Shown piece by piece: positions 41,101 through 59,100 of a DNA stretch of 64,000 bases. Below the pieces are notes generated by a model, which ran no database searches, was not told the DNA's origin, and saw only the letters and a program-made list of their open reading frames with translations. Every line of letters starts with the position of its first letter. The stretch's first letter is position 1. The stretch is taken from NCBI RefSeq assembly GCF_036588685.1, contig NC_086385.1, forward strand, positions 49,127,216 to 49,191,215. Direction: 5' to 3'. This DNA is from Mytilus trossulus. Taxonomy: Eukaryota. The position numbers and the translations under genes were made by a program.

Positions 41101-44100
41101 ATTTAAAAAACTTAATTGTCTCAGAGAAGGTAATATTTGTTTTTTTGAAAGACACATTTGTTCAAATTAAAATAGTCTTTAGGAATTTGTTGTCAGAATA
41201 TTTGAAATCTGATCATAAGACAAGTTTTGAGTTTGATGTATGAACCAGTAATAATGCATAGAGTTACATTGTTACAAAACTATATTTCCAAACGGCTTTG
41301 TAAGTGGAAAACATGAAATGAAAAGACTGATTGACGATGTCAATGTTTAATGAATAGGTTGATAAGTTAGTATTTTTGTTAATGAAATGAAATATTATTT
41401 AATCGATCCTTACGGGAACATCCTGCCATGTCAAAGTCAAGACTGAGTCTTGTACGAAATAAATCAAAGCTATTCTTCGGGGATCATTCTACCATGTCAT
41501 AACTAAAACAAAGACACAGTTGTGTACGAATAAATCAAAGCTATCCTTACGGGATCATCATACCATGCATGTCATAGCTAAATCCAAGACAGAGTCTTGT
41601 ACGGATAAATCAAAGCGATCACCAAGGGCACAAGTACGAACATTGAGTAAAAAATTGAAACAAGCATTGATAAATGATCATCTAAATCAGATGACACTAA
41701 ATACATTTTGTCCTTGAATCTGACCTTGACTTTGGACTCCTCCACAAATAATTTACTTTACATAAATAGATAAATTGTTGGTGTTTACGAACCAAAACCA
41801 CATATAAAGAACAGTATCTCTAAAGATGAACATGAAACGAATGCAACAGAATTATTAGATAATTATTTTCGTTAGAACAGAAAGATCGAATAGTTATGCG
41901 CCATTTTAGGGCATAATGTTTTCTGATCTGTGCGTCCGTCCGTCAGTCGTACCGTCCGTCCGTCCGTCCGTTCGTTCGTTCGTTCGTTCTTTCGTTCGTT
42001 TGTTCGTCCGTCCGTTCGTCCGTCTGTCCCGCCTCAGGTTAAAGTTTTTGGTCGAGGTAGTTTTTGATGAAGTTGAAGTCCAATCAACTTAAAACTTAGT
42101 TAACATGTTCCCTATGATATGATCTTTCTAATTTAAATGCCAAATTAGATATTTTATCTCTTTATCGCGGTCCACTGAACATAGAAAATAATAGTACGGA
42201 TGGGGCATCCGTGTACATAGGACACATGCTTGGTTGTTTTCCTGTTTCAATGATGGGTGGGATTTAGGACAAGTAAGCCTAAGTACAACATGAGTCTTAT
42301 ATTTTACTCTTATACGTTTGATGATTGTGGGTCGTTTCTGTTCAAGTGAGTGACTCTAATAAAACGAAACAAACCTTTACCGTTGTTATAAACTACTTGT
42401 TGTGTTTGTTTATGTATCGTTTCGCACATTCGCCTTCTCCCATAGCTACCAGATTGGTTTGTTGTCCTAAATGGAATATTCTTGGTCCAATAACTATAAA
42501 AATGGATATCGTTAGGGGAAACATAATCAGGGGAAAAAACTAGGTAGAATTAATACAGCAGATTATATGTTACAAGCACATAACCATAGGATCTTTCTTG
42601 AAAGTATGATACAGCGAAACTCTCAAAAGCTTTTAAGTAAGATTAAACTTGTATATAAATCATGTTTCATTCCAGAAAATGGTGTTTGCCTCTTTTTACA
42701 CATATTTTTATTATGCATCATTTTTCATTTCAGAGAATGGTTTCTGGTGCTTACTTGATATTGTTCCAATCAAGAATGAAAAGAGCCAAGTTGTACTGTT
42801 CTTAGTATCACACAAAGATATAACCAAAGACCGAACGCCGTCCATCGTTACCAATAATAACAAAGATGAATCAGGGTCAGATGAAGGTAATTGTATCTTT
42901 TTTTCTTGTAAAATAATTAAATAGTTTACAGTTCTGTACGCACAGCACCGTATACATGGTGCTGACGTACAAAACTCTCACATGGGAGTAGCCACTTGCA
43001 AAAGTCAAGTGCATTTTTATTCAGGTAATAAGTACACGTAATTCATTTTATATCAATGAGAATTATGAAAATTGTCTCGTCTCTAACTAGCACTGCAACA
43101 TCAATATTTGCGACTCTTCTTTGACTATCAACCTGTAAATAAATAATTTTCATAACTATTTATTTGGAAAAAAGCATCTAGAGCACTTGACTGCAATGAA
43201 TCGAATGACTTTAACTACTACCAAACCACCCGTGCATGCAATTCTTCCCTCATACTTTATATATCCAATCAAACAGACCTTTCTATAAATAGCATAAACA
43301 CATGTTCCTTACCAAACAAAACAAACTAGCATCGATATATGTACAACTTTGATAAATATAAATAGTTGTAGTATAAACATGTATTTCTAGTTACTTTATC
43401 TAAATATGTTTTACATGCATTTACGCAAAATTAGGAACTTTTTTACACGGGAATAAACATCCTTCCAATGTGCCGTAGTTTTATACGATGTTAAAGAACA
43501 ATTTTTAAAAAGAACCATATTTATATTACTGTGAATTCATTTATTTTCGAGGGTATCAACTTTTGTGAAAACTTGAATTTTCGTTGGTATTTGATTTCGT
43601 GTTTTAGATAATCTCCGCATACAAAGCCTTTAGAAAATGTGTGATTCGATCAACATTTGAATTCGTGGTTCATCTGTAACCACGAAAACCACGAAAATTG
43701 ATATCCAACGAATAATAATGAATCCACAGTACTTGTTGTTGGGTTTTACAAATCCAATAGTGTTCACCATTATCAATATTTATTACATTGTATAGGCTTG
43801 TAAATTCTAAGTAAGTCTGTTCATTTATGTTTAAAAATGCTACATTCATTATTAGACTGTGCAATTTCATACATAAAATGTTGATAAAAAAAAAATTCGA
43901 CACTAGAAAATACCGCTAGTCTTAGAGATGAATAATCATTTGAGACATTAGACTATTCACCGGATTTGTTATTACATAAGCAACACGACGGGTGCCACAT
44001 GTGAAGCAGGATCTGCTTACCCTTCCGGGACACCTGGGATCAGACACCCCTAGTTTTTGGTGGGGTTCGTGTTGCTTATTCTTTAGTTTTCTATGTTTTG

Positions 44101-47100
44101 TCATGTGTACTAATGTTTGTCTGTTTTGTCTTTTTCATTTTTAGCAATGGCGTTGTCATTTTATTTTAGATTTATGAGTTTGACTGTCCCTTTGGTATCT
44201 TTCGTCCCTCTTTGAGGACGTAATACTAAGTTTCATACTGAAATGAAAATTTTAACAGCAATGTTGTTGTTAACCACCAGCTGTGTGTTTTACTCCTATT
44301 TCGAGTCTCTGAAGCTCGCATTTCACCTGTTTCTTAGCTTCATACACAAACAGCTGATATTTAATGACACTAAACAGTTATTGTCTATGTAAAATTGTAA
44401 TTAAATGGTTGAAATCTTAGATTTTGGCATACAGTGCGAATGAAATAAATTTTACAATGTTGATTGTTTTAAAGGTTTACGTTCAAAACTTGACGTAATG
44501 TGTTACTTGACATATATAAAGCTGTTCTGTCCAGAAGTTAAACTGATAAGTTTACTTTCCAAATCTGTTGACAATTACCTCTTTCAAATTTTATTTCATT
44601 TTTTCTTGGTATCAAGTCTATTTTAAGAGAATACATGATCATGTTAGAAGTGGTGTACTTTTGAAAAGGTTTTAACACTATATATTAATTGGTATATCGT
44701 GATATATAAATTCAAGTATTAAGTTGTTGACATTTTAAGTATATATATCAGTGACATTTTCCTTTTTTTTGCCCCAAAAATATTTTTCTTAATATAAGAT
44801 TTGTTTTTCCTAAGAAAAAGGTTTAGGTCACATATGCAGTATTTTTTTTTTTGAAGAGTCTATAATTTTATTATTTAGAAATAAGAAATTTTGTTAGAAA
44901 CTATTTTAATGTGTGTGTGCTTTCTTCTGTTTCGAATTCACTAAGATGTAATTATCGTTAACTTTTTCATTGTTAATCTGCATCAACAGATGTTTTTCAT
45001 TGTTAATCTGCATCAACAGAATTCACGTGGCCACGCAGAATTTTCGCTACAGCTAGCCAAACGTTTGAATTTCTGAAATTCAAATTTATTGTATAATTTC
45101 TTTTTAATAAGAAAAAAAATAAAAATTTGAACGTTATATGAAATAGAGCAACAATTGGAATCGGTTATTACAAAAACAACAAGCTCATTGAATATTTAAA
45201 TAACACAAATTGCAACTCTGAAAACTAAACCAAATCGCAACTATGCCCTTTCAAACTAAAATCAAAACTATCTCCTTTCAAACAAAAAAAAAGACAAAAT
45301 CTTCGTTCGCACATGACTATTATTGCAATTATGTGCTCAGAAAGAACAAGTTTTTCCTCGTTACAAATTCCACTCGTTGGAAAGCAAATCTCCGGAGATA
45401 ACCCGAATTCGGTAAAGTCATAACATGTATGTCATAATCACATTAAAGAGTACAAAATAATGGCTATAAAACTTTGTACATAAAGGTATCTTTGATCATG
45501 TTGACGTTGAAATAGTGACATTAAATTTACCATAAAGATCTTTTCAGCCTACTTAAATGAAAGAAAAAGAAAAAAATACATTATGCTAATTGATTGTTTC
45601 TATTTATAGAAGAAGATTTGTTTGATCCTCCAACCATTCCTTTACGCAGTGCTGATATGCCAACTAACTATCATTATGACAGACGAAGAAGTCGAGCGGT
45701 CCTTTATCAGCTGTCTGGCCAGTTCGACAAACATAAGCATAACAGAACAAAGAGTAAACTACAGAAGCTTAATAATGTAAGGCAGTAGTATGATATGTTC
45801 TTATGTTTATTGTATATGTATGACGTATATATAGGACAATCTTGTCAATATAACGAAACTATAACATAACAGGGAGGTTTAGCTAGCTATAAAACAAGCA
45901 TTCTGTCATAAAAATACCTGTACCAAGTTTTGTTTAATAGTACCATGTCATGTATCACCATGATACATATATTACAGTATGTACTTAAAAACAAATAAAA
46001 CTTCTACATGTCAACAAAAAAAACAAGAACATTTAATGTCACAATCATTTGCCGAGAACAGATTTTTCACTAGCGAGAAGAAATATTTTCTCACACCGGT
46101 CAGGAAATGTGAAAATAGCACAAAAAATAAAGACATATTTTTCTCACACCGGTCAGGAAATGTGAAAATCGCACAAAAAATAGAAAAAAATCTAAATATC
46201 TACTTATTTGTATCAAGTAATAATGTCCATTCAGGAAATAAGAAAATGAATGGAGGAAATAAGCAGCAAACATCTTTATTTCCTTATCAAATGTTGCTAT
46301 ATTCCCTGTTCTTCATCAATTTTCTAAATACTGCTAAGCTATAAAACAAATTTATTAGATATTCAAATTGATAATTATAAACAACACCTACATTGTAATT
46401 TATTATTTATCATATAAGACCCTGATTGAACCATTTGATCGGAAATTAATCAATTGGATAATTTTTGTCTTATTCAAACTAACAATGGTATTATGTATCA
46501 TTTACGCCTAATCACATTATTTCTATATTAAAATAAGTAGATATTCAAGCTAGCAATGGTCTTATGTACTATTTATGCCTAATTAAATAATTTCCATATC
46601 AAATAATTTAATTTTGGATGTATCGCGTCTTCTGATTGGCTGACGTTATTTCGTTATGAGCCCATAGACATAATTTAACGTTTTTTCGTCGTTTTCTATG
46701 GTTTAAAATGGAATTTGGAATTAAATTATAAGAAATGCGCGTTATTCAGTGTTCACCAAATTTTTAATGTTATTTCTTCATAGACAGAAAAAATATTACA
46801 GTCATTCCTTAAATAAGAAAATATGGTATGATTACCAATGAGAAAACAATCCACCAGAGTTGAAATGAAATGGATATTATTTGGCAATAGTAAAAAAGGC
46901 TCAATCACTTTACATTCTCTTAAACTAGAAAAAGACGAAAGTTTCTTGTATTAAATAATTTTTCACAACCATGTTTATGAATGTCTTTTGCAGTTCACCG
47001 GGTCAATATCAGGGCAGATGCCAGAGTACAAAGTCCAAGAGGTCAAAAAATCTAAATTTGTGATTGCTCATTATGGAATATTCAAGGTCGGCTGGGATTG

Positions 47101-50100
47101 GTTGATATTATTATGTACATTTTATACTGCCATAATGGTTCCTTATAATGCAGCATTTTCAAACAAAGACGTCAAAGAATCGCGAGATTCAATTTACTCA
47201 GATGTTGTTGTGGAAATATTATTTATAATAGGTAAGATTAGGGTTTTTGTATGACATCTTGCATGTAAATACTGTAAACCAACTAAATTTCGTGGGCGAT
47301 TTATTTTCGCGACTTTCGCGAGTAGAAAAATAACGCGAAATTAAATCGTCGGGAAAAGGAATAACTTGGATCTTTCCCTATCAAACAGCATTCAGTAAAT
47401 TAGAAAATCGCGAAAATAAATCGCCGCGAAGTTGACTAGCTGGGTATAAACGCGAATATAAGTTGGTTTACAGTAGTATATATAGGCGATAACGTCTTCT
47501 ATACATGTCAAATGTAGGATATTTTCGTTGCATAATCTAAGCCAATGAAAATAGTTGTTACATTAAGATTGAATAGAAATTGAATTTCATTGTATACTGG
47601 CATGCATACACGAGTCGGAACTAGTGGAAATTGTCTCTAGAAAGTTAAAGATGATTGATCCATGGTATAGTTAAGGTGGTCCAACACCTTCACGAAAATT
47701 AATGTGGCTCGTTTAATTTTCATAAATTTTTAGAAAGTATTTTGAAAGTACTTCGACTCTTTGACAAAAAAAATTAAAAAAATGAAAGTACTTTGACCCT
47801 TTGACAAAAAAATAAGAATTTCAAAACATTTGAACCAACTATTTTATCAGAAAAATTACACTGGTTATATAGTAGTTTGACAAACACAAAATGTTGATCA
47901 TTGAGAAGCCTAATACTCCTTTACATTTGTAACAACACAAAGTAATTAAAACGTTTAGCTGATTTTACAGAGTTATCACACTGTAGTGTTAGGTACCACC
48001 TTAACACTCAAAACAGACGAGATAACTATAAATTGAGAAGGAGAAAGATAATACATTTATCTGATAAAAAAAACGTATAACTTAATGAACATGGATGATA
48101 AGCATACACAAAAGAAAAAAAAGAAGATTAAAAAAAAACATTTTGGTATTAAACTTCAGAAGATGAACTAAGATTAACGAAAGGATTTAAATTCGAATGT
48201 GAACATCACAGACAGATATAAAGTCATACAAATAAAATGAATATACATTTCATTAAGTTATAAGCTTTGCTCTGCGATTTTCAGCCGAATTATACATGTA
48301 CCTTTTCTAGCTTGTTGAATACTCCTAATACTCAACGTGTGTTTCAGCAATTCTTAGTTTTTACTGGATAATGTGAAATAAAATCAGAGATGACATAATT
48401 TTATATTTGCCTTAATTCCTCTGATTTCTGATTTTCATTTGGTGACTTCGACATGCATAATAAAACCAAAAATAAAATAAACACTTTTATACCCATCATA
48501 TGGTAAAACAAAGTAAGAGTGAATGTCTGCAGAAAGATCAAAGAGCAACAAACGACAAAAAGAACAGTCAACCTCATAAGAACACACCATGAAAAAAAAG
48601 AGAGAATATCAAAAAGACCAACAACAATATATATAACAAAACATAGAAAACTAAATACTGTGCAATATGGACCAAGCCAAATTCGGAGTGGTACAGGTAT
48701 TAGGTGCTACGGAAGGGTAAAAACAGGATCAATGTCATCCAACGTGTCTCGTACCGATTGACATTTTTCGACTCTCAAATTCAAGTTTATGACATCAACT
48801 ATGAGAAATATCGTACAAAGTACTCGATGTAGAGTACTGTTATCATGTATTTTCATCTATCCTAACTAACAACTACTGGTGACAAAAAAAACTAAAATAT
48901 GCATGCACTTACATGTATGATCAAACTTAAAAGGTAAATCACAAAAATATCGAACCCGAGGAAAATTAAAAACATAAGTCCCTAATATGTACAAAATGTA
49001 TAATTTAACAACCTATCTTTATTATGACAATATACATATTATATGTTTTTATCTTGTATTTTCAGATATAGCTTTAAATTTTTGTACATCGTTTCTAAGT
49101 AGAAGTGGCCATATAGTTTATGATTTAAAACAGATAGCAATTAACTACATAAAAGGATGGTTTTTATTGGACCTTCTTGCCGCCCTTCCTTTTGACTTCC
49201 TGTTTTTATTCAATGTCAACTTGGTAAGTGATCGTTTGATTGGTTGAGAATTTCTGATTTATCTAAACGAATCTCAATAGGAATAGGATCAATAAGCATG
49301 TTTTTTTATCAAATCAAATCACTTTAGTGAATTATAAAATACATTAAACATTTAAAAAAAACACGGGGGGGGGGGGGATAATTCAGTTGTCTGTACAATA
49401 CTGAAAGGCAGACACATTTGACCATTGAACGTTTATTTTTCATATTTTATTTACGTTTTGATCAGAAAAAATAAACAGATTGTTGTCATGTTATTTCACA
49501 TTTGATATAAAACGCCAGTACAGTGTAGCTCAAACTAGCTTTGTGGGATTTTTGTCGTGTTTGCATAAAAAAACTGTAACCAAAAAAACACAAGTACATT
49601 AGCTCAAAATAACCAGATGGTAATGTTATTTTAAAGGCAACAGTAGTATACTTCTGTTCAAAAGTTATAAATCGATTGAAAGAAAACAAATCGGGTTACG
49701 AACTTAAACCGAGAGTAACACACCAACTTTCAGAGGAAAACAACGAAACAACAGAACAACGAAGTGCAACAAAAGCAAATGACAATGCAACAATAGAATA
49801 GAAACGAACTATTAGATAATAATAGAAAACAGTAGTATATTTGCTCAAACTAGCGTTCAAAGATTTATCTTTGTTTCTTTACATTTGTTATAGAAAACAC
49901 CCGTACATTTGCTCAAACTAGCCAGATTGTTACGTCTTGCCAGACTTCTCCAGAAAATAGATAGATATTCGCAATACAGTGCTGTTGTTGTGACACTGCT
50001 GATGTGTATGTTTGCCATGAGCGCCCATTGGTTAGCATGCATATGGTACGCCATAGGATATAAGGAATTAAAAAATAATCCACAGAATTGGACAGTAGGT

Positions 50101-53100
50101 ATGTGAGAATTACATAAATTAGGACTGGCTTCAAAATATAAGTTCCTTTCTGTTTAGATTTAATTATGGCCTTGCTATTGTATAATGGTACTTTAAACAC
50201 ATTGTTGTCTTTAATGTTTCTACGCGCAAGTTATTTGTTTTTCCAATGACTGCGTACACAAATTTAATTCGCCGTTTCAAAATCTAATGAATTCTGGGTA
50301 ATATGGGGACGAAGTCCCCAATTACGGTAGAAAAATCAATGAAAAAAAAATAAAAAAAATCGGGAATATTTCCAGAATTTTTCATTCTACTAATGAACTC
50401 AAAATCGTTAACTTTTTTTTCAGATCTACTTCCTGTTCCGGTTTTCCCGGACAGATATCTGTCTTGTTTGCACGAGACTTTGAAAAAAAATTATATTTAT
50501 CAGTCTAGAATAATATAAGATTGAAACTCAATTTAAATTCAATTTTAATAATTGTTTGTTATGAAAAAAAAAACGTTACCTGATGAAAGCGTTTCTTTTG
50601 TTTACATCGAATATGACGTCATAACTTAAAGAACGTCACAGCTAAATCCCTTACAACAGAACCAAAATCGGGAACGTTACGTGCGGTATTTCGGTTTCTT
50701 TCATTAACATGTTTGCATTAAAAAAAAATAATACATACAGACTTCGTCCCCATTCACAGGTGATGCCTGCCTCATATTATTTTAAAAAACGGACACCAAA
50801 ACGTCGTGATTGGTTGAAAATGTCATAAACAATGGAAATTCAGCCGATGTCAAGACGTCATTTTCCCATTGGGGTTCGAACAATGAAATTACCCATGATG
50901 CTTTAGATTCTGAAACGGCCAATTATTGAATTGGTTGTCTGGAGGTACCATAAAAATAATTTAGTTTTCTTATTGATCTGAACATACCCGATGCATTTTA
51001 AATGGTACAGCTCACACATAATTTTTCGTCTAATAGTATATTACACAACAAGATGGTTGTCGGATGATACATAAACACATGATTTTTTTTATAAGGGTAA
51101 GGAATATAAAAGAATGGTTGTCTTTTGGTACTGTACAGAAAACCTAATGATTTGAACTAAGTTAACAATGTTAATGTTTTTTTTGTTGATGTGGAGTTTA
51201 TTTTAAAGGTGTACATTTTCGAATTATTTGATGTTATTTCTTAGGATGGTTATTTGAGTTGGCAGAAAGAATCGATGATCCGATAGATTCAAACAGAACC
51301 AACAAACCAGACATACTAACATCCTACCTGACAGCACTTTACTTTACATGTAGTAGTTTAACAAGCGTTGGTTTTGGTAATGTGTCTGCCAATACCAACG
51401 CAGAGAAAATATTCTCAATATGTGCCATGTTAATAGGTGGTAAGTTCGTCTATTTTTTATTTTATCTACTGTTCGGAAACTATGATGTATCAGAAGTCTG
51501 GTCAATAATATTTCCAGTCGACAGAATTTTAGTTGCCAATAAAAGAAATCAATTCATTTTGAAGGTTGTTAGCCATTATACATACATATATCTTAATACA
51601 TCGTTATGAGTGTACAATTACAGGACGTGCAAGGAAGCTTAAAATAAAACATTCTATATAGCAGGCGTCAATATTAGTACACATCATAGTTACCAAAAGA
51701 CATGGAGGCAAACAAATACAACGGTACACGTGCATTTGTTAAAGAACAACCACTCAATACCATGAAAGAAACAAACCCTTCAAAATCTTTACAGTAAAGC
51801 AATGTTTTGATAATTCATTGTAAAACATTAAAACGTCAATACAGATGACTTCATAAAATAGGGACGAAAGATACCAAAGGGACAGTCAAACTCCTAAATC
51901 TAAAACAAACTGACAATGCCATGGCTAAAAATTAAAAAGACAAACAGACAAACAATAGTACACATGACACAACATAGAAAACTAAAGAATAAACAACACG
52001 AACGCCAACAAAAACTAGGAGTGATCTCAGATGCTCCGCATGTGGCACCCGTCGTGTTGCTTATGTGACTCGTTCTTTGATTCATAGCCTTTGATTTGTT
52101 TAGTGTCCATGTGTTGTTGCCTTTGAGTTTGGTATTTTTGAAATATTGTTTTCATTATTCTTGTGATCAGGTGAGGATATAACTAACTGGTGTGTTGTGA
52201 GGATATATAACTAACTGGTGTGTTGTGAGGATATATAACTAACTCGTGTGTTGTGAGGATATATAACTAACTCGTGTGTTGTGAGGATATATAACTAACT
52301 GGTGTGTTGTGAGGATATATAACTAACTGGTGTGTTGTGAGGATATATAACTAACTGGTGTGTTGTGAGGATATATAACTTACTGGTGTGTTGTGAGGAT
52401 ATATAACTAACTGGTGTGTTGTGAGGATATATAACTAACTGGTGTGTTGTGAGGATATATAACTAACTGGTGTGTTGTGAGGATATATAACTAACTGGTG
52501 TGTTGTGAGGATATATAACTAACTTGTGTGTTGTGAGGATATATAACTAACTGATGTGTTGTGCTTTCAGCCATGATACACGCCGTAGTTTTCGGTAATG
52601 TGCAAGACATTACGCAGCGAATGTATTCTAGATGTGCCAACAACTACTGAGAGATAACGTATTGTTTAATTTCCCTTTCAGCCATCATACACACCATAGT
52701 GTTCGGTAATGTGACTGTAATTATACAGCGAATGTATTATAGATGTACCAACTACTATATAACTAATTGTTTCGTTTCCATTTCAGCCATGATGCACGCC
52801 GTAGTGTTCGGTAATGTTACTGCCATTATACAGCGAATGTATTCTAGACGTGCCAACTATCACTATAAAACCAAAGATCTCAAAGATTTCTTTAGAACAC
52901 ATCATATACCAAAACCACTCAAACACAGGATGCAGGAACACTTCCAGGCAACTTGGTCTGTAAACAACGGCATCGATACAAATGAGGTAAGATAACAGAC
53001 AAGCAACGTGGTCTGACAATAAGGGTATCGGTACCAATGAGGTAAGGTAACACCCAGTCTGTCAACAACGGCATCGATACTAATAAGGTAAGATAACACC

Positions 53101-56100
53101 GAGTCTGTCAACAACGGCATAGATAATAATGAGGTAAGGTAGCACCGAGTCTGTCAACAACGGCATCGATATTAATGAGGTAAGATAACAGACAGGCAAT
53201 GTGGTCTGACAATAAGGGTATCGATGCCAATGAGGTAAGGTTATACCCAGTCTGTCAACAACGGCATAGATACTAATGAGGTAAGGTAGCACCGAGTCTG
53301 TCAACAACGGCATCGATACTAATGAGGTGATATTACACCCAGTCTGTAAACAACGGTATCGATACAAATGAGGTAAGATAACAGACAGGCAATGTGGTCT
53401 GACAATAAGGGTATCGATACCAATGAGGTAAAGTAACACCGAGTCTGTCAACAACGGCAACAATACTAATGAGGTAAGGTAACACCGAGTCTTGTCAACA
53501 ACGGCATCGATACAAATGAGGTAAGATAACAGACAGGCAATGTGGTCTAACAATAAGGGTATCGATACCAATGAGGTAAAGTAACACCGAGTCTGTCAAC
53601 AACGGCAACAATACTAATGAGGTAAGGTAACACCGAGTCTTGTCAACAACGGCATCGATACAAATGAGGTAAGATAACAGACAGGCAACGTGGTCTGACA
53701 ATAAGGGTATCGATACCAATGAGGTAAGGTTATACCCAGTCTGTCAACAACGGCATCGATACTAACGAGGTGAGGTAACACCGAGTCTGTCAACAACGGC
53801 ATCGATACTAATGAGGTAATGTAGCACCGAGTCTGTCAACAACGGCATCAATACTAATGAGGTAAGGTAACACCGAGTCTTGTCAACAACGGCATAGATA
53901 CTAATGAGGTAAGATAACACCCAGTCTGTCAACAACGGCATCGATACTAATGAGGTAAGATAAAACCCAGTCTGTCAACAACGGCATCAATACTAATGAG
54001 GTAAGGTAACACCGAGTCTTGTCAACAACGGCATAGATACTAATGAGGTAAGATAACACCCAGTCTGTCAACAACGGCATCGATACTAATGCGGTCAGGT
54101 AACACCGAGTCTGTCAACAACGGCATCGATACTAATGAGGTAAGATAAAACCCGAGGCAACGTAGTATGTAAACAAGGGTATCGATACACATGAGGCTAG
54201 ATCAATTCCAGGTAACGTGGTCTATTAATAAGAATATCAATACCAATGAGGTAAGATAATTTCAAGGCTAGGTGGTCTGTTAACAACGGTATCGATACAA
54301 ATTATAAAAGATGTCATTGAGACAACGTGGTCTTCTAACAAGGGTATCAATATAAGCAGCTTCCTAATTAAAATGAGATAAGGTACGTAACTTCAACGTT
54401 ATATAGTCTGTTAAGAACGAAATCGGAACCAAAAAGTTCAAATAAAATATTAGCGAGTTTGTCTGTTACCACTTAATGCAATTATAATGAGGTTATGTAA
54501 ATAAAGGCACAACAGTAGTATACCGCTTCAAAACTCATAAATCCATAGACAAAAACAAAATCAGGGTAACAAACTAAAACCGAGGGAAACTCATTAGATA
54601 TAAGAGGAGAACAACAACACAACACTAAAATGTAACACACACAGAAACGGACCAAACACCAGACAAAATCCCAAGAGAATAACAAATATAACATCAAAAC
54701 CACATACATGAATTTGGGCTAGACAAGTACCGTGACACGTCTTATCGCAATGTGCATTTACACTAAAAAATAAGAGAAAAAAAACGATGCAAAGTTAAAA
54801 TGTAACACACACAGAAACGAACAATAATATAACTATGTAACACACAGGCAGAATCAGATTTTACACGATTCATCCGATGAAGTTCGAGGAGAAAAATAAG
54901 TCATCTTCCACATCACATTTTCTGAATTAGTTTATTGCCAATATACAATATTACATTTTTCAGATTTTAAAAGATTTCCCCGATGAACTTCGAGGAGAAA
55001 TAGGTCTTCACCTACATCATGACATCCTATCTTTGCCAATATTTGAGGATGCCACACAAGGATGTTTGAGGTCTATCTCTCTTCATACAAAGCGCGCATT
55101 CTGTGCCCCGGGAGATTTCCTATCTCACAAAGGCGATGCTGTGAACTACGTATATCTACTGTGTAATGGATCTATGGAAGTTCTTAAAGAAGAAATGGTG
55201 GTTGCCATTCTAGGTATGCTGAACAAAATTAATGCTCTAATCATCAATTTAAATTACTTAAACTAGTATACTCAATCCAAACATGGAATATTTACGGTTC
55301 GACTATAAAAGGATATATACGTCCACCTCTTCTCAAAGCATCCCAATATGATAACTTTTATTTGTTTCCTATATTTATACATATACCTCATTGGAATGTT
55401 TTAATATATTATAACCGGAAATGTTGATATAAATGTATATAAATGTATATTCAAATGCCTAATAGATGCTTAAATTAATTTTATTTGGTCTTTGTTAATA
55501 GTTGTAGCATTGGTATTATTTTAGTATCTCCTTATTTCAATTCGTTGTATGTGTAGGAATGGTATAACGTTGAATTCTATAAGATCTGAAGAACTCCCTT
55601 ATCTTTACTTTTACCTTGGAGTTTGTTAATTTTGTTCATTTAAATGGAAGACTTAACTCCTTTAACAAGAAAAGAATCATACATCCTTGAAAGTTTGTTC
55701 TTTATCTCCTTTAACTTTACAAATCCCTCAGACAAAGTTGACCTTACATGGTTTGGCTCTTATTTTCAGGGTCCTTTTTGGTTGTATAGCTCGTTAACTG
55801 TTCAGTTGATATACACTCTCACTTTCAACTATATGTCTTTGCTCGTACTTGGTTGGGATAAAGCTAGAAAAGCAATGTATAAAGTGCTGGTTTTATTTTT
55901 TTACAACTTTTAAGCACTGGACATAATTCACTGATTAAAAAGAAATACATGAATACAGTACGTATTTATCCGTCAGATTCCAGAATTTACATATGTTTTG
56001 ACCTGGAAGTTATATTTTCTGTGTATCAAAACGCTTTATAATTTCAGGGAAGGGAGATTTATTTGGTGCTGACATAAATATGGACGATCCAGTAGGAATT

Positions 56101-59100
56101 TCATGTTGTGACGTCAGATCCTTGACCTACTGTGAACTACAATGCATAAATATACGTGGATGTGTAGATGTGTTATCCCTGTATCCAGACTTTGCAGAAA
56201 AATTTCAGAAGGACATACGACATGACTTGACATATAATCTCAAGGATGGATATGAAGATGAAGAGGTATACTGTGAATTCATAATTTTCGTCGGAATCAA
56301 TTTTCGTGGATTAAGGAAATGTTTTTTTTTATGTTTGCATTCAGGTCTATATAAAATTGATAGTTTGTTAAAGATTTAGATTCGTGGTTAATCAGTACTC
56401 CCGAAAACAACGAAAATTGCCAATCCTAATAAATGTACATTATATATGTTTTGACAAATACCTACTAGTAATTGAATAGTCATTGCAGTTTGAATACTTT
56501 AAATCTGCAAAATTCGTTGATTGATAAAGCTTAACATTAGATTCTGTCAGTTGCTATTGACTTTTCTTTATTAATTCTATGAGGTATATATGTATTTTGA
56601 CTAATAACTACTAGTAATTGAATAGTCATTGCAGTTTGAATACTTTAAATCTGCAAAATTCGTTGATTGATAAAGCTTAACATTGGATTCTGTCAGTTGC
56701 TATTGACTTTTTCTTTATTAATTCTATGAGGTATATATGTATTTTGACAAATATTTACTAGTAAATATATTGTAATTGCAGTTTAAATACTTTAAATTTG
56801 CAAAATCTATTGGTTGGTAAAGCTTAACTTTCAATTTTGTAATTTTTTATGTCGTTCCCCTTTTTTAATTCGATGATAATTCTTGTATTGATATCATCCT
56901 TAGTCAATTCATTCGGCTTTATATGAGATGGGAGAACTATTGAAATGTTTAGTGACTGGACATCGTCATTTTATCACAAGATGGACACACTTTGCTAGAA
57001 GCTTGTTTATTGTGTTTATTAACGTTTAATATGAATTATATAAATAAACGAACAACTTTTATCCATTTAGATAAAGTTTCCAGTTATGTATTGTCTGGTT
57101 TGCTGTAAACTATTAAACAGCGGTATACTACTGTTGGCCATTTGATTAGGGACTTTTCGTTTTGAATTTTCCTCACAGTTCAGTATTTTTGTGGTTTTTT
57201 TTGCATTATTTTAGCATATTCATCATCTGCATCATTCGGTAACCTGATGGTGTTTATTTTTATTTGATTGGATTGAGCTTCGGAACAAACAGCCATGTGC
57301 CTTGTGCACGAATATCGGCAGTAAACAGTTATTTTTAATCGAATAAAAGTGTCCTTCAATGAAGAAAGAAATTTACTAGATTTGGTTAAATGTTTAACAT
57401 AACACATTGCGTCGCCTACATTGATATTATTGGGAAAGGGTCCTTACGTGAAGATACAACTGTACGTTTGGGTTTGCACGTGATTTATATAACACATTAC
57501 GTGACCTACATTATGTTCTTAAGGGAAAATGTCAAAAATGGAGATGATAGAATTGTACTTTTAGACTTGGCATAATGTTTTACATAACTGATTATACAAA
57601 CGATCGATTATTCATATCTAAATCATATAGCGAGCGTCTTAAAACATCTCAATTAGTGTTCACTTCTGGGGAGAATGACTCTCATTATATCTACTGACAT
57701 TCACACAGAGTAATTTCTATTCAAGGTATTTTAAAGAGGGGGTAATCTTATCAGTGAGTGGGTTAATTAGTACCATTTTCTATAGATTGTAGTCCGAAGT
57801 TTATTCAGGTGATTGGGTTAATTAGTACCAGTAGATTCAGGTTGAAATAATAAAGCTGTCTATAAGTTCACTAGACAATGGTATAATCCTCTAATTAAGC
57901 AGTTTACGTGTGATACGTGCATATTAATTGGAATACTCTTAGGGACAAATCTCCGTAAAATTTTCAAATAAAGTACCAGCTAATAATTTCTCTGAAATTA
58001 CTTAGAAGCAATAAATTTTAAAAAAAAATCAGCACAAAATCAACATATCGGATTTATTCATGATCCATTATCAATTTGAATTATTAAGTGGATTTAAAAC
58101 AGTCAAATATATACAACAATAAAACAAGCTTTCATATTGCTGTAGACCATAACTAAATTATAACAATATTGTAAAACCTATTTACAATCAACAGAAATAA
58201 GCTTTTGAAATAAGGCTTTGTGTACATTTTGCGTTTAATATAAAAAAAAAAAAAAGAAGATGTGGTATGATTGCCAATGAAACAATTATCCACAAAAAAA
58301 AACAAAATGACACAAACATAAACAGCTATAGGTCACCGTACGGCCTTCAACAATGAGCAAAGCTAATACCGTCTAGTCACTCTAAACATGCCTAAACATG
58401 TATTATATGAAATTTTTAATTGCAACATCATAAATGCCTTTCGACTTTTGTTCGAAAGTGACGTTTTCCATGTTTATCAGTATAGTCGTAATTTTGTCAT
58501 TTTCAAAATTGTATGTGCCTCTTTGCTTTATTATCCTTTAAGATAGTGATGATTATAGGCACAACAAATTAACAATCACTTTCGAAGAGTTCCTGTACCG
58601 AGTCAGGAATATTACAGTTGTTATACTTTCGTTTGGTGTGTTTGAGCTTTTGATTTTGTCATTTGATTAAGGACTTTCCGTTTTGATATTTTACTTTTTA
58701 CTGATAAGTTTGGTTGGATTTCATGAGAAGTACAAATTCAGTATGATAATATGGCTGATCGCATAAATATTTATCCTAAAATATAGAATTACTGAGCTAT
58801 TTCATTGATGCTCACAGTACACGTATCCTCGTAAACAAAACTTTCTGCTACATCTGAATAGCAAATGCCGACATAAAATAAACTTCATAACTATTGATGA
58901 CAACTTATCTTCAACTGTTTTTTTTTTTATTGAAATCTCATTTAAGACCAACTAAGACTGTGCTTACAACCTAATTGGCACAAAGAAAGTAATTCCTAGA
59001 TTTACATTAATCCTTGTCAGAAGCTAACAAATATGTGACGATTACAATAATTGCAATGATACCTTTAAGTTAACAACATACAAAGAAAATGCCTGTACCA

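What the first reader, a model, noticed from the sequence alone, without database searches (positions are those of the whole stretch)
52165..54350. All three splice signals of the channel-gate exon are tandemly amplified around it
Seen: the 200-nt S6/C-linker exon sits inside a 2.2-kb block built from copies of its own splice signals in natural order: 14 branch-point units, 3 acceptor/exon-start blocks, the exon, then 26 exon-end/donor units. The copies have diverged from each other, so a simple assembly duplication is unlikely. Known: this exon encodes the activation gate and C-linker, and C-terminally truncated KCNH isoforms (e.g. hERG-USO) can reduce functional channel. Inference: the arrays may act as splice-site decoys, a copy-number-variable control of productive versus truncated/NMD transcript, or raw material for new introns and exons. 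Neutral slippage tolerated by accurate exon definition is equally possible.
Basis: partly seen in the sequence, partly recalled or inferred. Interest (0 to 1): 0.85.

Follow-up and report, generated by a model that had tools for sequence, protein, structure and literature searches.

The report
Splice-junction minisatellites around a mussel channel exon
One exon of a mussel potassium-channel gene is flanked by three real tandem arrays copied from its own splice signals, a known kind of repeat ("mirage" or F7-type junction minisatellite) that is most likely a tolerated by-product of a repeat-rich genome, not a splicing control device.

Summary
The 200-nt exon at 52787-52986 encodes the C-terminal part of S6 and the first half of the C-linker of the Mytilus trossulus KCNH8-like (Elk) channel. 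It sits between three arrays:
- a 28-nt x13.8 array, which amplifies the branch-point segment at -8 to -30;
- two decaying copies of acceptor plus exon start, 111 and 105 nt apart;
- 26 copies of exon end plus donor in 55-nt and 46-nt units, 19 of them with an intact GTAAG, followed by a degenerate tail to about 54500.

The exon-bearing arrays occur only at this locus. The three paralogues and 78 homologous exons from other animals have nothing like them.

The kind is already known: "mirage" minisatellites in amphioxus and the human F7 intron-7 VNTR, where only the donor next to the exon is used. This scan has already reported the same kind in other windows of this genome.

Every Mytilus gene model uses the canonical junctions. 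The pseudo-exon copies decay as neutral sequence. Three more junction duplications lie in this gene and one in a paralogue. About 8% of random 90-nt windows here also have a nearby direct copy.

The best reading is slippage or unequal exchange anchored on a conserved exon edge, tolerated because the inner sites are chosen. A decoy or regulatory role has no support but is not excluded.

The parts
51244..51439 (+). Upstream exon (pore and N-terminal S6, P0377 residues 411-475); its donor at 51440 must pair with one of three acceptor copies
   Evidence: Exact match to the M. trossulus protein P0377, exon by exon
52160..52563 (+). 28-nt minisatellite, 13.8 copies at 98% identity. Each unit carries an AACTAAC branch-point-like motif. 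The last unit runs straight into the first acceptor copy.
   Evidence: TRF; homology to the 31 nt before the true acceptor, score 15 against null 5.8 +/- 1.1, 0 of 2000 shuffles
52564..52681 (+). Pseudo acceptor block 1: ctttcag followed by a copy of the first ~75 nt of the exon starting at 52571. In-frame TGA at 52648-52650.
   Evidence: 13 of 75 nt differ from the exon, 7 nonsynonymous and 2 synonymous codon changes
52675..52786 (+). Pseudo acceptor block 2: ccctttcag followed by an exon-start copy from 52682. The frame is open and in phase (105 nt) with the true exon. Its 3' part (52754-52786) is the branch-point and polypyrimidine region of the true acceptor.
   Evidence: 13 of 75 nt differ, 9 nonsynonymous and 2 synonymous codon changes
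52787..52986 (+). True 200-nt exon: C-terminal S6 and first half of the C-linker (P0377 residues 476-542)
52987..54251 (+). Donor array of 26 units. L units (55 nt) hold exon -42 to -1 plus intron +1 to +13. S units (46/47 nt) hold exon -30 to -1 plus a 16-nt spacer. Units are arranged in higher-order repeats. 19 keep an intact GAG/AAG|GTAAG.
   Evidence: found only at this locus in the genome
54252..54500 (+). Degenerate tail of older donor units
   Evidence: units 29-30; TRF row 54125-54302, period 55, 71% matches
54854..54945 (+). Decayed copy of TCAG plus about the first 88 nt of the next exon, lying 110 nt upstream of that exon's true acceptor
54964..55215 (+). Downstream exon (second half of the C-linker and start of the CNBHD, P0377 residues 543-626); the acceptor that the donor array competes for
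49585..49854 (+). Two decayed copies (49585-49618 and 49822-49854) of the acceptor plus start of the S4 exon, which begins at 49894

Best explanation
These are junction-spanning minisatellites of the 'mirage' or F7-IVS7 kind, lying in the Mytilus trossulus KCNH8-like (Elk) channel gene.

Shown:
- Replication slippage or unequal exchange duplicated segments that straddle the exon's two edges. A ~105-nt unit (about intron -33 to exon +72) was copied twice. A 55-nt unit (exon -42 to intron +13) and later a 46-nt unit (exon -30 to +16) were amplified to 26 copies in higher-order blocks.
- The 23-nt stretch just upstream of the first acceptor was separately blown up into a 28-nt array.

Inferred:
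- The exon edge is held constant by selection on the protein, which is identical in five Mytilus species. It therefore acts as a non-decaying master copy that keeps reseeding the array. Distal units decay.
- The arrays are tolerated and not used. The spliceosome pairs the innermost acceptor and the first donor, which define a 200-nt exon, as was shown experimentally for the identical pseudo-donors of human F7.
- Any slip to a downstream donor meets an in-frame TAA 7-9 nt into the intron. Use of the first acceptor copy meets a TGA. Such transcripts would be unproductive and probably removed by nonsense-mediated decay.
For: - The arrays are real, diverged and hierarchically structured.
- S units differ from the exon end at 2 of 30 positions and L units at 6 of 30. 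The exon-proximal 68 nt reappear at 53645-53712 with 98.5% identity, while the tail is about 71% or less. This fits repeated seeding from the exon edge with continuing turnover.
- Pseudo-exon copies show 13 of 75 nt differences, with 7-9 nonsynonymous against 2 synonymous codon changes.
- The donor motif columns are no more conserved than other columns.
- The exon-bearing arrays are unique to this locus. They are absent at the three paralogous exons and at 78 homologous exons from other animals.
- The window encodes exactly the M. trossulus RefSeq protein P0377. All Mytilus models from five species join LIG|AMMH and DTNE|ILKDF with no insertion.
- Further junction duplications occur at acceptors 49894 and 54964 of this gene and at a donor of the C3 paralogue.
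- 7.8% of 600 random 90-nt windows have a direct copy within 400 nt, so junction hits are expected in this genome.
- Literature: tandem repeats spanning exon-intron boundaries ('mirages') occur at both 5' and 3' boundaries in amphioxus and do not disturb regular splicing (PMC3087553). In F7 IVS7, the 37-bp pseudo-donors are functional but silent, and the most upstream site is always chosen (PMC1557585).
Against: - No RNA reads could be laid on the locus, so silence of the decoys is inferred from gene models and from precedent in other animals.
- With about 19 equally strong donors and a well-formed second acceptor that would give an in-frame +35-aa product, some decoy use is quite possible.
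- My own test for junction enrichment is weak and inconsistent. It gives 5 of 20 junction windows in this gene against 7.8% background (p = 0.017), but only 7 of 52 when the paralogues are added, which I estimate (not computed in a call) at p about 0.1. A junction-specific mutational process is therefore neither shown nor excluded.
- Three arrays around one exon is still an unusual cluster.
- The 28-nt unit has roughly 70% similar 28-nt arrays at two other loci, so its origin from this intron's own branch-point region is not the only possibility.
Confidence: 0.72

Rival explanations
1. The arrays work as splice-site decoys. Their copy number sets the ratio of productive channel mRNA to truncated or NMD-targeted transcripts, so they act as a variable-number control on gate-exon inclusion.
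For: - 19 decoy donors are as complementary to U1 as the true one.
- Every downstream-donor choice hits the in-frame TAA at 52993-52995, and acceptor copy 1 hits a TGA.
- Acceptor copy 2 has a good pyrimidine tract and stays in frame.
Against: - There is no conservation signal on the motifs, and the pseudo-exons decay neutrally.
- Paralogues and other animals have no such arrays.
- Gene models show only canonical junctions.
- The identical F7 arrangement is silent in experiments.
- The same kind of repeat sits at unrelated junctions (and earlier scan notes).
Confidence: 0.1
2. A junction-specific mutational process (for example splicing- or transcription-coupled breakage, or microhomology at AG|GT-like motifs) preferentially seeds tandem duplications at exon edges in this genome. 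The arrays have no function of their own.
For: - 5 of 20 junction windows in this gene have a local direct copy against 7.8% background, p = 0.017.
- The same donor junction was seeded at least twice, giving L and then S units.
- There is microhomology at the breakpoints: TATA[AT]AAC for the acceptor unit and CAG for the L unit.
- Earlier scan notes report many such junction arrays in this genome (I did not check them).
Against: - Adding 32 paralogue junctions gives 7 of 52, which I estimate at p about 0.1.
- One of the five positives is purely intronic.
- Survivorship could mimic enrichment: arrays anchored on a selected exon edge do not decay away.
Confidence: 0.13
3. The donor array is a ladder of in-frame 30- or 39-nt micro-exons that can be included to lengthen the C-linker by repeats of [10 protein letters not shown].
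For: - Each unit is a 30- or 39-nt in-frame segment bounded by AG and GT.
- Two units (53297-53326 and 54273-54302) each encode ten residues identical to P0377, at 533-542 and 532-541.
Against: - The GT...AG spacers are 16 nt, well below what I take, from general knowledge, to be the lower limit for spliceable animal introns.
- The pseudo-acceptors lack pyrimidine tracts.
- No Mytilus protein model carries such an insertion.
Confidence: 0.02
4. The arrays are an assembly artefact: the arrays or their copy numbers were created by mis-assembly.
For: I could not check genomic read support.
Against: - The units are diverged, ordered in higher-order blocks and graded from young to decayed.
- The flanking sequence is unique and no second copy exists in the assembly.
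Confidence: 0.03

Closest known systems
'Mirage' minisatellites of amphioxus (Adh3, globin genes BflGb6 and BflGb9; Canestro et al. 2002 as cited in Ebner et al. 2010, PMC3087553)
   Same: - Tandem repeats whose units span an exon-intron boundary, at either the 5' or the 3' edge of an exon.
- Many units carry AG/GT signals.
- Central units are homogenised and edge units are excluded from homogenisation.
- Regular splicing is reported as unaffected.
- They have been proposed as raw material for intron gain.
   Different: - This case is in a mollusc, with both edges of one exon affected plus a third, purely intronic branch-point array.
- It has far more copies (26 against 2-6 in the globin genes) and two unit types in higher-order repeats.
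- Length polymorphism and splicing were not measured here.
Human F7 intron 7 37-bp VNTR (Borensztajn et al. 2006, PMC1557585)
   Same: - The first unit contains the exon-intron junction, so the true donor is followed by identical pseudo-donors competing for one acceptor.
- Those pseudo-sites are functional but silent because the most upstream site is chosen.
   Different: - F7 has 5-9 units; here there are 26, with units of 46/55 nt.
- Acceptor duplication is also present here.
- Selection of the first donor is inferred here, not tested, and the splicing machinery is a mussel's.
Intron gain by tandem duplication of an AGGT-containing segment (Rogers model; Hellsten et al. 2011, PMC3265369, seen only as a search hit)
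   Same: Tandem duplication creates extra, potentially usable donor-acceptor pairs from existing coding sequence.
   Different: No new intron or exon has been formed at this exon. The conserved KCNH exon boundaries are still the ones used in all the gene models.
C-terminally truncated KCNH isoforms such as hERG-USO
   Same: A truncated product would lack the CNBHD, as USO-type isoforms do.
   Different: Those isoforms arise from alternative 3' ends, not from repeat decoys. No truncated Mytilus transcript was seen or could be looked for.

Membership tests
Junction-spanning ('mirage' / F7-type) minisatellite | Head-to-tail tandem copies, two or more | tested here: met
   TRF: 2.7 copies of 105 nt and about 24-26 copies of 46/55 nt
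Junction-spanning ('mirage' / F7-type) minisatellite | The unit contains exon sequence plus the adjoining splice site, and the copy next to the exon is the real junction | tested here: met
   - Acceptor units hold a pyrimidine tract, AG and about 75 nt of exon start.
- Donor units hold 30-42 nt of exon end plus GTAAG and 13-16 nt of intron.
- The 28-nt array holds no exon sequence. It is an ordinary intronic minisatellite made from the branch-point segment.
Junction-spanning ('mirage' / F7-type) minisatellite | The authentic site is used and the repeated sites are silent | tested here: inconclusive
   Protein models of five Mytilus species, including the RefSeq model that this window encodes exactly, use the canonical junctions. 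No reads could be examined.
Junction-spanning ('mirage' / F7-type) minisatellite | Length instability or polymorphism | not testable with these tools
- Indirect evidence only: a 98.5% identical recent copy.
- Five different intron starts follow the identical exon in ORF fragments from other assemblies.
Regulated unproductive splicing (poison or decoy sites) | Use of the alternative site introduces a premature stop | tested here: met
   TAA at 52993-52995 after the true donor; TGA at 52648-52650 in acceptor copy 1
Regulated unproductive splicing (poison or decoy sites) | The alternative sites are conserved or constrained | tested here: not met
   - Absent at the paralogues and at 78 homologous exons.
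- The donor motif is no more conserved than the rest of the unit.
- Pseudo-exons decay neutrally.
- Orthologous Mytilus DNA could not be fetched.
Regulated unproductive splicing (poison or decoy sites) | Alternative junctions observed in RNA | not testable with these tools
KCNH (EAG/ERG/ELK) channel, Elk (KCNH8-like) branch | Sequence match of the exon to S6 and the C-linker, and of the gene to KCNH8-like proteins | tested here: met
   - Best solved match is the zebrafish ELK C-linker/CNBHD structure 3UKN, E = 3e-19; hERG residues 650-714 also align.
- Exact exon-by-exon match to M. trossulus XP_063412093.1, named 'subfamily H member 8-like'.

The most novel reading that the evidence does not exclude
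Exon-anchored minisatellites form a self-renewing class in Mytilus. Selection on the exon edge keeps an undecaying master unit that reseeds the array. The resulting ladders of 20 or more full-strength donors (and duplicated acceptors and branch points) measurably divert a copy-number-dependent share of KCNH8 pre-mRNA into NMD or into a +35-aa gate variant. That would make array length a heritable control on channel dosage.
Probability: 0.08. Interest if true: 0.7.

Novelty: new member of a known kind. Interest (0 to 1): 0.38.

Why it matters
If the arrays are silent, this locus is a stringent natural test of splice-site choice. About 19 donors identical in strength to the true one, three acceptors and 14 branch-point motifs compete, yet the annotated product uses only the inner pair. 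That extends the F7 'first site wins' observation to a mollusc and to acceptors.

This locus and the other junction duplications seen here show how a repeat-rich genome keeps generating spare splice signals. The published intron-gain models need exactly this substrate.

For annotation, such arrays are a predictable source of mis-called exons in bivalve genomes.

Tried and rejected

2. Orthologous DNA from other Mytilus assemblies.
- ORF fragments show that the same exon is followed by five different intron starts (VNIRLNT, VNIRPNT, VNIRLNI, VT, VRQMCF...), and none is this window's VR-stop.
- I could not turn that into a statement on whether the array is present or absent elsewhere.
- A search for those run-on tails in this window found nothing.

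3. The idea that the pyrimidine tract of the acceptor copies derives from exon sequence (GATTTCTTTAG). I rejected it for this exon. The 40 nt before the true acceptor match the region before the first acceptor copy (0 of 2000 shuffles reach the score). Beyond their exon-derived CCAACT they share only a short microhomology with exon positions 66-110, and the first-copy region itself does not match that stretch (p = 0.19). For the next exon (54964) an exon-derived origin is weakly favoured.

4. I rejected it because the spacers are only 16 nt and no model carries an insertion.

5. Junction enrichment. It is suggestive in this gene alone but not once the paralogues are added.

6. No paper on such repeats in molluscs turned up in four literature searches. 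The original mirage paper (PMC117041) is not held.

Exons were searched one by one by reference, and database proteins were used only for mapping.
Full report
WHAT IS THERE

The sequence and Tandem Repeats Finder show three adjoining tandem arrays around the 200-nt exon at 52787-52986.
- A 28-nt unit runs 13.8 times at 52177-52563 with 98% matches.
- A ~105-nt unit runs 2.7 times at 52564-52857 with 79% matches.
- A 46/55-nt array runs from inside the exon (52956) to about 54250. It has higher-order periods of 139, 148 and 193 nt and a degenerate 55-nt tail.

My unit-by-unit dissection adds detail.
- Acceptor AGs are followed by exon-like sequence starting at 52571, 52682 and 52787, which is 111 and 105 nt apart.
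- After the true donor at 52987 come 26 units. Nineteen end in GAG/AAG|GTAAG and match the U1-complementary consensus at 7 of 9 positions, exactly like the true donor.
- Four units have weaker GT donors, and three have a poor or dead donor.
- Decayed units continue to about 54500.

The one correction is that there are two pseudo acceptor blocks plus the real one.

GENE AND ORGANISM

The exon translates to [22 protein letters not shown]...NNGIDTNE. Among solved structures it matches the zebrafish ELK C-linker/CNBHD (3UKN, E = 3e-19) and hERG residues 650-714. That places it at the C-terminal part of S6 and the first half of the C-linker.

A representative search and a homologue search lead to molluscan 'KCNH8-like' proteins. 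The 90% cluster holds models from M. coruscus, M. californianus, M. edulis, M. galloprovincialis and M. trossulus.

The M. trossulus RefSeq protein (P0377, XP_063412093.1) is matched exactly by the window over residues 28-794, exon by exon. Residues 476-542 map to 52786/7-52986 and residues 543-626 to 54964-55215. The window is therefore this gene of M. trossulus, which agrees with an earlier scan note.

Exons were handled singly by reference.

HOW THE ARRAYS AROSE

Acceptor side. The copies align over the first ~75 nt of the exon, plus about 33 nt of upstream intron. The 31 nt before the first acceptor copy are the last 28-nt unit plus ctttcag. They align without gaps to the 31 nt before the true acceptor, with score 15 against 5.8 +/- 1.1 and 0 of 2000 shuffles reaching it. 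Three things follow.
- The duplicated unit was roughly intron -33 to exon +72.
- The 28-nt array is a later, nearly homogeneous amplification of the -8 to -30 segment that holds the AACTAAC branch-point-like motif.
- The alternative, that the pyrimidine tracts come from exon sequence, is not supported for this exon. The breakpoint shows only a microhomology, TATA[AT]AAC.

Donor side. L units (55 nt) hold exon -42 to -1 plus 13 nt of intron. S units (46 nt) hold exon -30 to -1 plus a 16-nt spacer.
- S units differ from the exon end at 2 of 30 positions and L units at 6 of 30.
- The exon-proximal 68 nt recur at 53645-53712 with 98.5% identity.
- The distal tail is down to about 71% or less.

This is the picture expected of unequal exchange or slippage in an array whose first unit is the exon edge itself. 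That unit cannot decay, because the protein is identical in five Mytilus species, so it keeps reseeding the array while distal units rot. The 'natural order' of branch points, acceptors, exon and donors is forced by the geometry of tandem duplication across a junction.

WHAT DECOY USE WOULD DO

- Reading past the true donor gives GAG GTA AGA TAA. Any downstream donor therefore yields a premature stop.
- Acceptor copy 1 meets TGA at 52648-52650.
- Acceptor copy 2 is in phase, and its frame is open through to the exon. It would add 35 residues that partly duplicate S6.
- The two pseudo-exon copies each differ from the exon at 13 of 75 nt, with 7-9 nonsynonymous and 2 synonymous codon changes. 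They show no sign of purifying selection.
- Across the 26 donor units, the GAGGTAAG columns are no more conserved than other columns.

COMPARISONS

- In the 1.30-Gb assembly the exon-bearing arrays occur only here.
- The 28-nt unit has about 70% similar 28-nt arrays at two loci on contig 7. One of them also ends just before a pyrimidine-AG.
- The three paralogous KCNH exons have no arrays.
- None of 78 homologous exons on host contigs from metagenomes has a tandem array at its edges.
- All Mytilus protein models join LIG|AMMH and DTNE|ILKDF without insertion.
- ORF fragments from other assemblies carry the identical exon followed by five different intron starts, none like this window's. The donor-proximal intron therefore varies among the sampled genomes, but I could not fetch the DNA.

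NOT PECULIAR TO THE GATE EXON

The same gene has decayed junction copies at two other acceptors.
- The S4 exon (49894) has copies 68 and 308 nt upstream.
- The next exon (54964) has a copy of TCAG plus about 88 nt lying 110 nt upstream.

The contig-3 paralogue has a 56-nt x2 duplication, one mismatch apart, of exon end plus GTAA.

On background, 47 of 600 random 90-nt windows in this window have a direct copy within 400 nt.
- Five of 20 junction windows in this gene do (p = 0.017), but one of these is purely intronic.
- With 32 paralogue junctions added, the count is 7 of 52, which I estimate at p about 0.1.

A high general rate of tandem duplication is therefore enough to explain junction hits. 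My data do not establish a junction bias. Earlier scan notes claim one for this genome, and I did not check them.

WHAT IS KNOWN

Ebner et al. [quoted passage not shown]
- They occur at both 5' and 3' boundaries.
- Many units carry AG/GT signals.
- Central units are homogenised.
- Haplotypes differ in length.
- RT-PCR indicates normal splicing.
- The authors propose a model for intron gain.
- They credit the term to Canestro et al. 2002, which is not held in the library.

Borensztajn et al. 2006 (PMC1557585) studied the human F7 intron-7 37-bp VNTR.
- Its first unit spans the junction.
- The 5-9 identical pseudo-donors are functional but never used.
- Selection goes to the most upstream site, in several cell types.

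I found no report of such repeats in molluscs.

VERDICT

The best-supported explanation (about 0.7) is a set of exon-anchored junction minisatellites plus one branch-point minisatellite.
- They were produced by slippage or unequal exchange in a tandem-repeat-rich genome.
- They are tolerated because the innermost acceptor and the first donor define the exon.
- Mis-choices are unproductive.

The steps shown are the anatomy, the history, uniqueness to the locus, neutral decay of the pseudo-exons, the canonical gene models and the recurrence at other junctions. The steps inferred are silence of the decoys and the master-copy reseeding.

A decoy or regulatory role (about 0.1) and a junction-specific mutational bias (about 0.13) remain open. 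The micro-exon ladder and assembly artefact readings are unlikely.

LIMITS

- The scan has already reported the same kind of repeat in other windows of this genome.

Noticed in passing
G000:C7:14978083-14979490 (L009 1089-2490) and G000:C7:24989099-24989658: Two further arrays have a 28-nt unit (ATAAAACTAACCTATGTTGAGTGTGTAT, 51 copies at the first locus) about 70% similar to the 28-nt unit here. The first ends directly before tatctttag, so it may also be an amplified branch-point/acceptor segment, or all three may share a mobile origin.
   Followed up: partly
window 54854-54945: A decayed copy of TCAG plus about the first 88 nt of the next exon lies 110 nt upstream of that exon's true acceptor at 54964. 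The true acceptor's pyrimidine tract may itself derive from exon sequence (a colinear TTGCCAATAT match, p = 0.03).
   Followed up: partly
window 49585-49618 and 49822-49854: Two decayed copies of the acceptor plus start of the S4 exon (true start 49894), at 85-88% identity over 33-34 nt.
   Followed up: partly
G000:C3:91594565-91594679, minus strand (L027 49-163): In a KCNH paralogue, the last 52 nt of the exon homologous to 54964-55215 plus GTAA are duplicated in tandem (56 nt x2, one mismatch). This gives a second identical donor and looks like a very young junction duplication.
   Followed up: partly
protein cluster P0151, P0251-P0254: ORF fragments from other assemblies carry the identical exon followed by five different intron starts (VNIRLNT on 22 contigs, VNIRPNT, VNIRLNI, VT, VRQMCFF...). 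None matches this window's VR-stop, so the donor-proximal intron varies among the sampled Mytilus genomes.
   Followed up: partly
window 51890-52075 and 43925-44134: Fragments of the same dispersed repeat lie in opposite orientations: on the + strand in the intron just upstream of the 28-nt array (51904-52065), and on the - strand at 43925-44134. Both translate to ...HMT(K/Q)[10 protein letters not shown]...QKLGV.
   Followed up: no
window 56441-56828: A 146-nt x2.7 tandem array at 91% identity starts about 175 nt downstream of the exon that ends at 56265. It is purely intronic.
   Followed up: no
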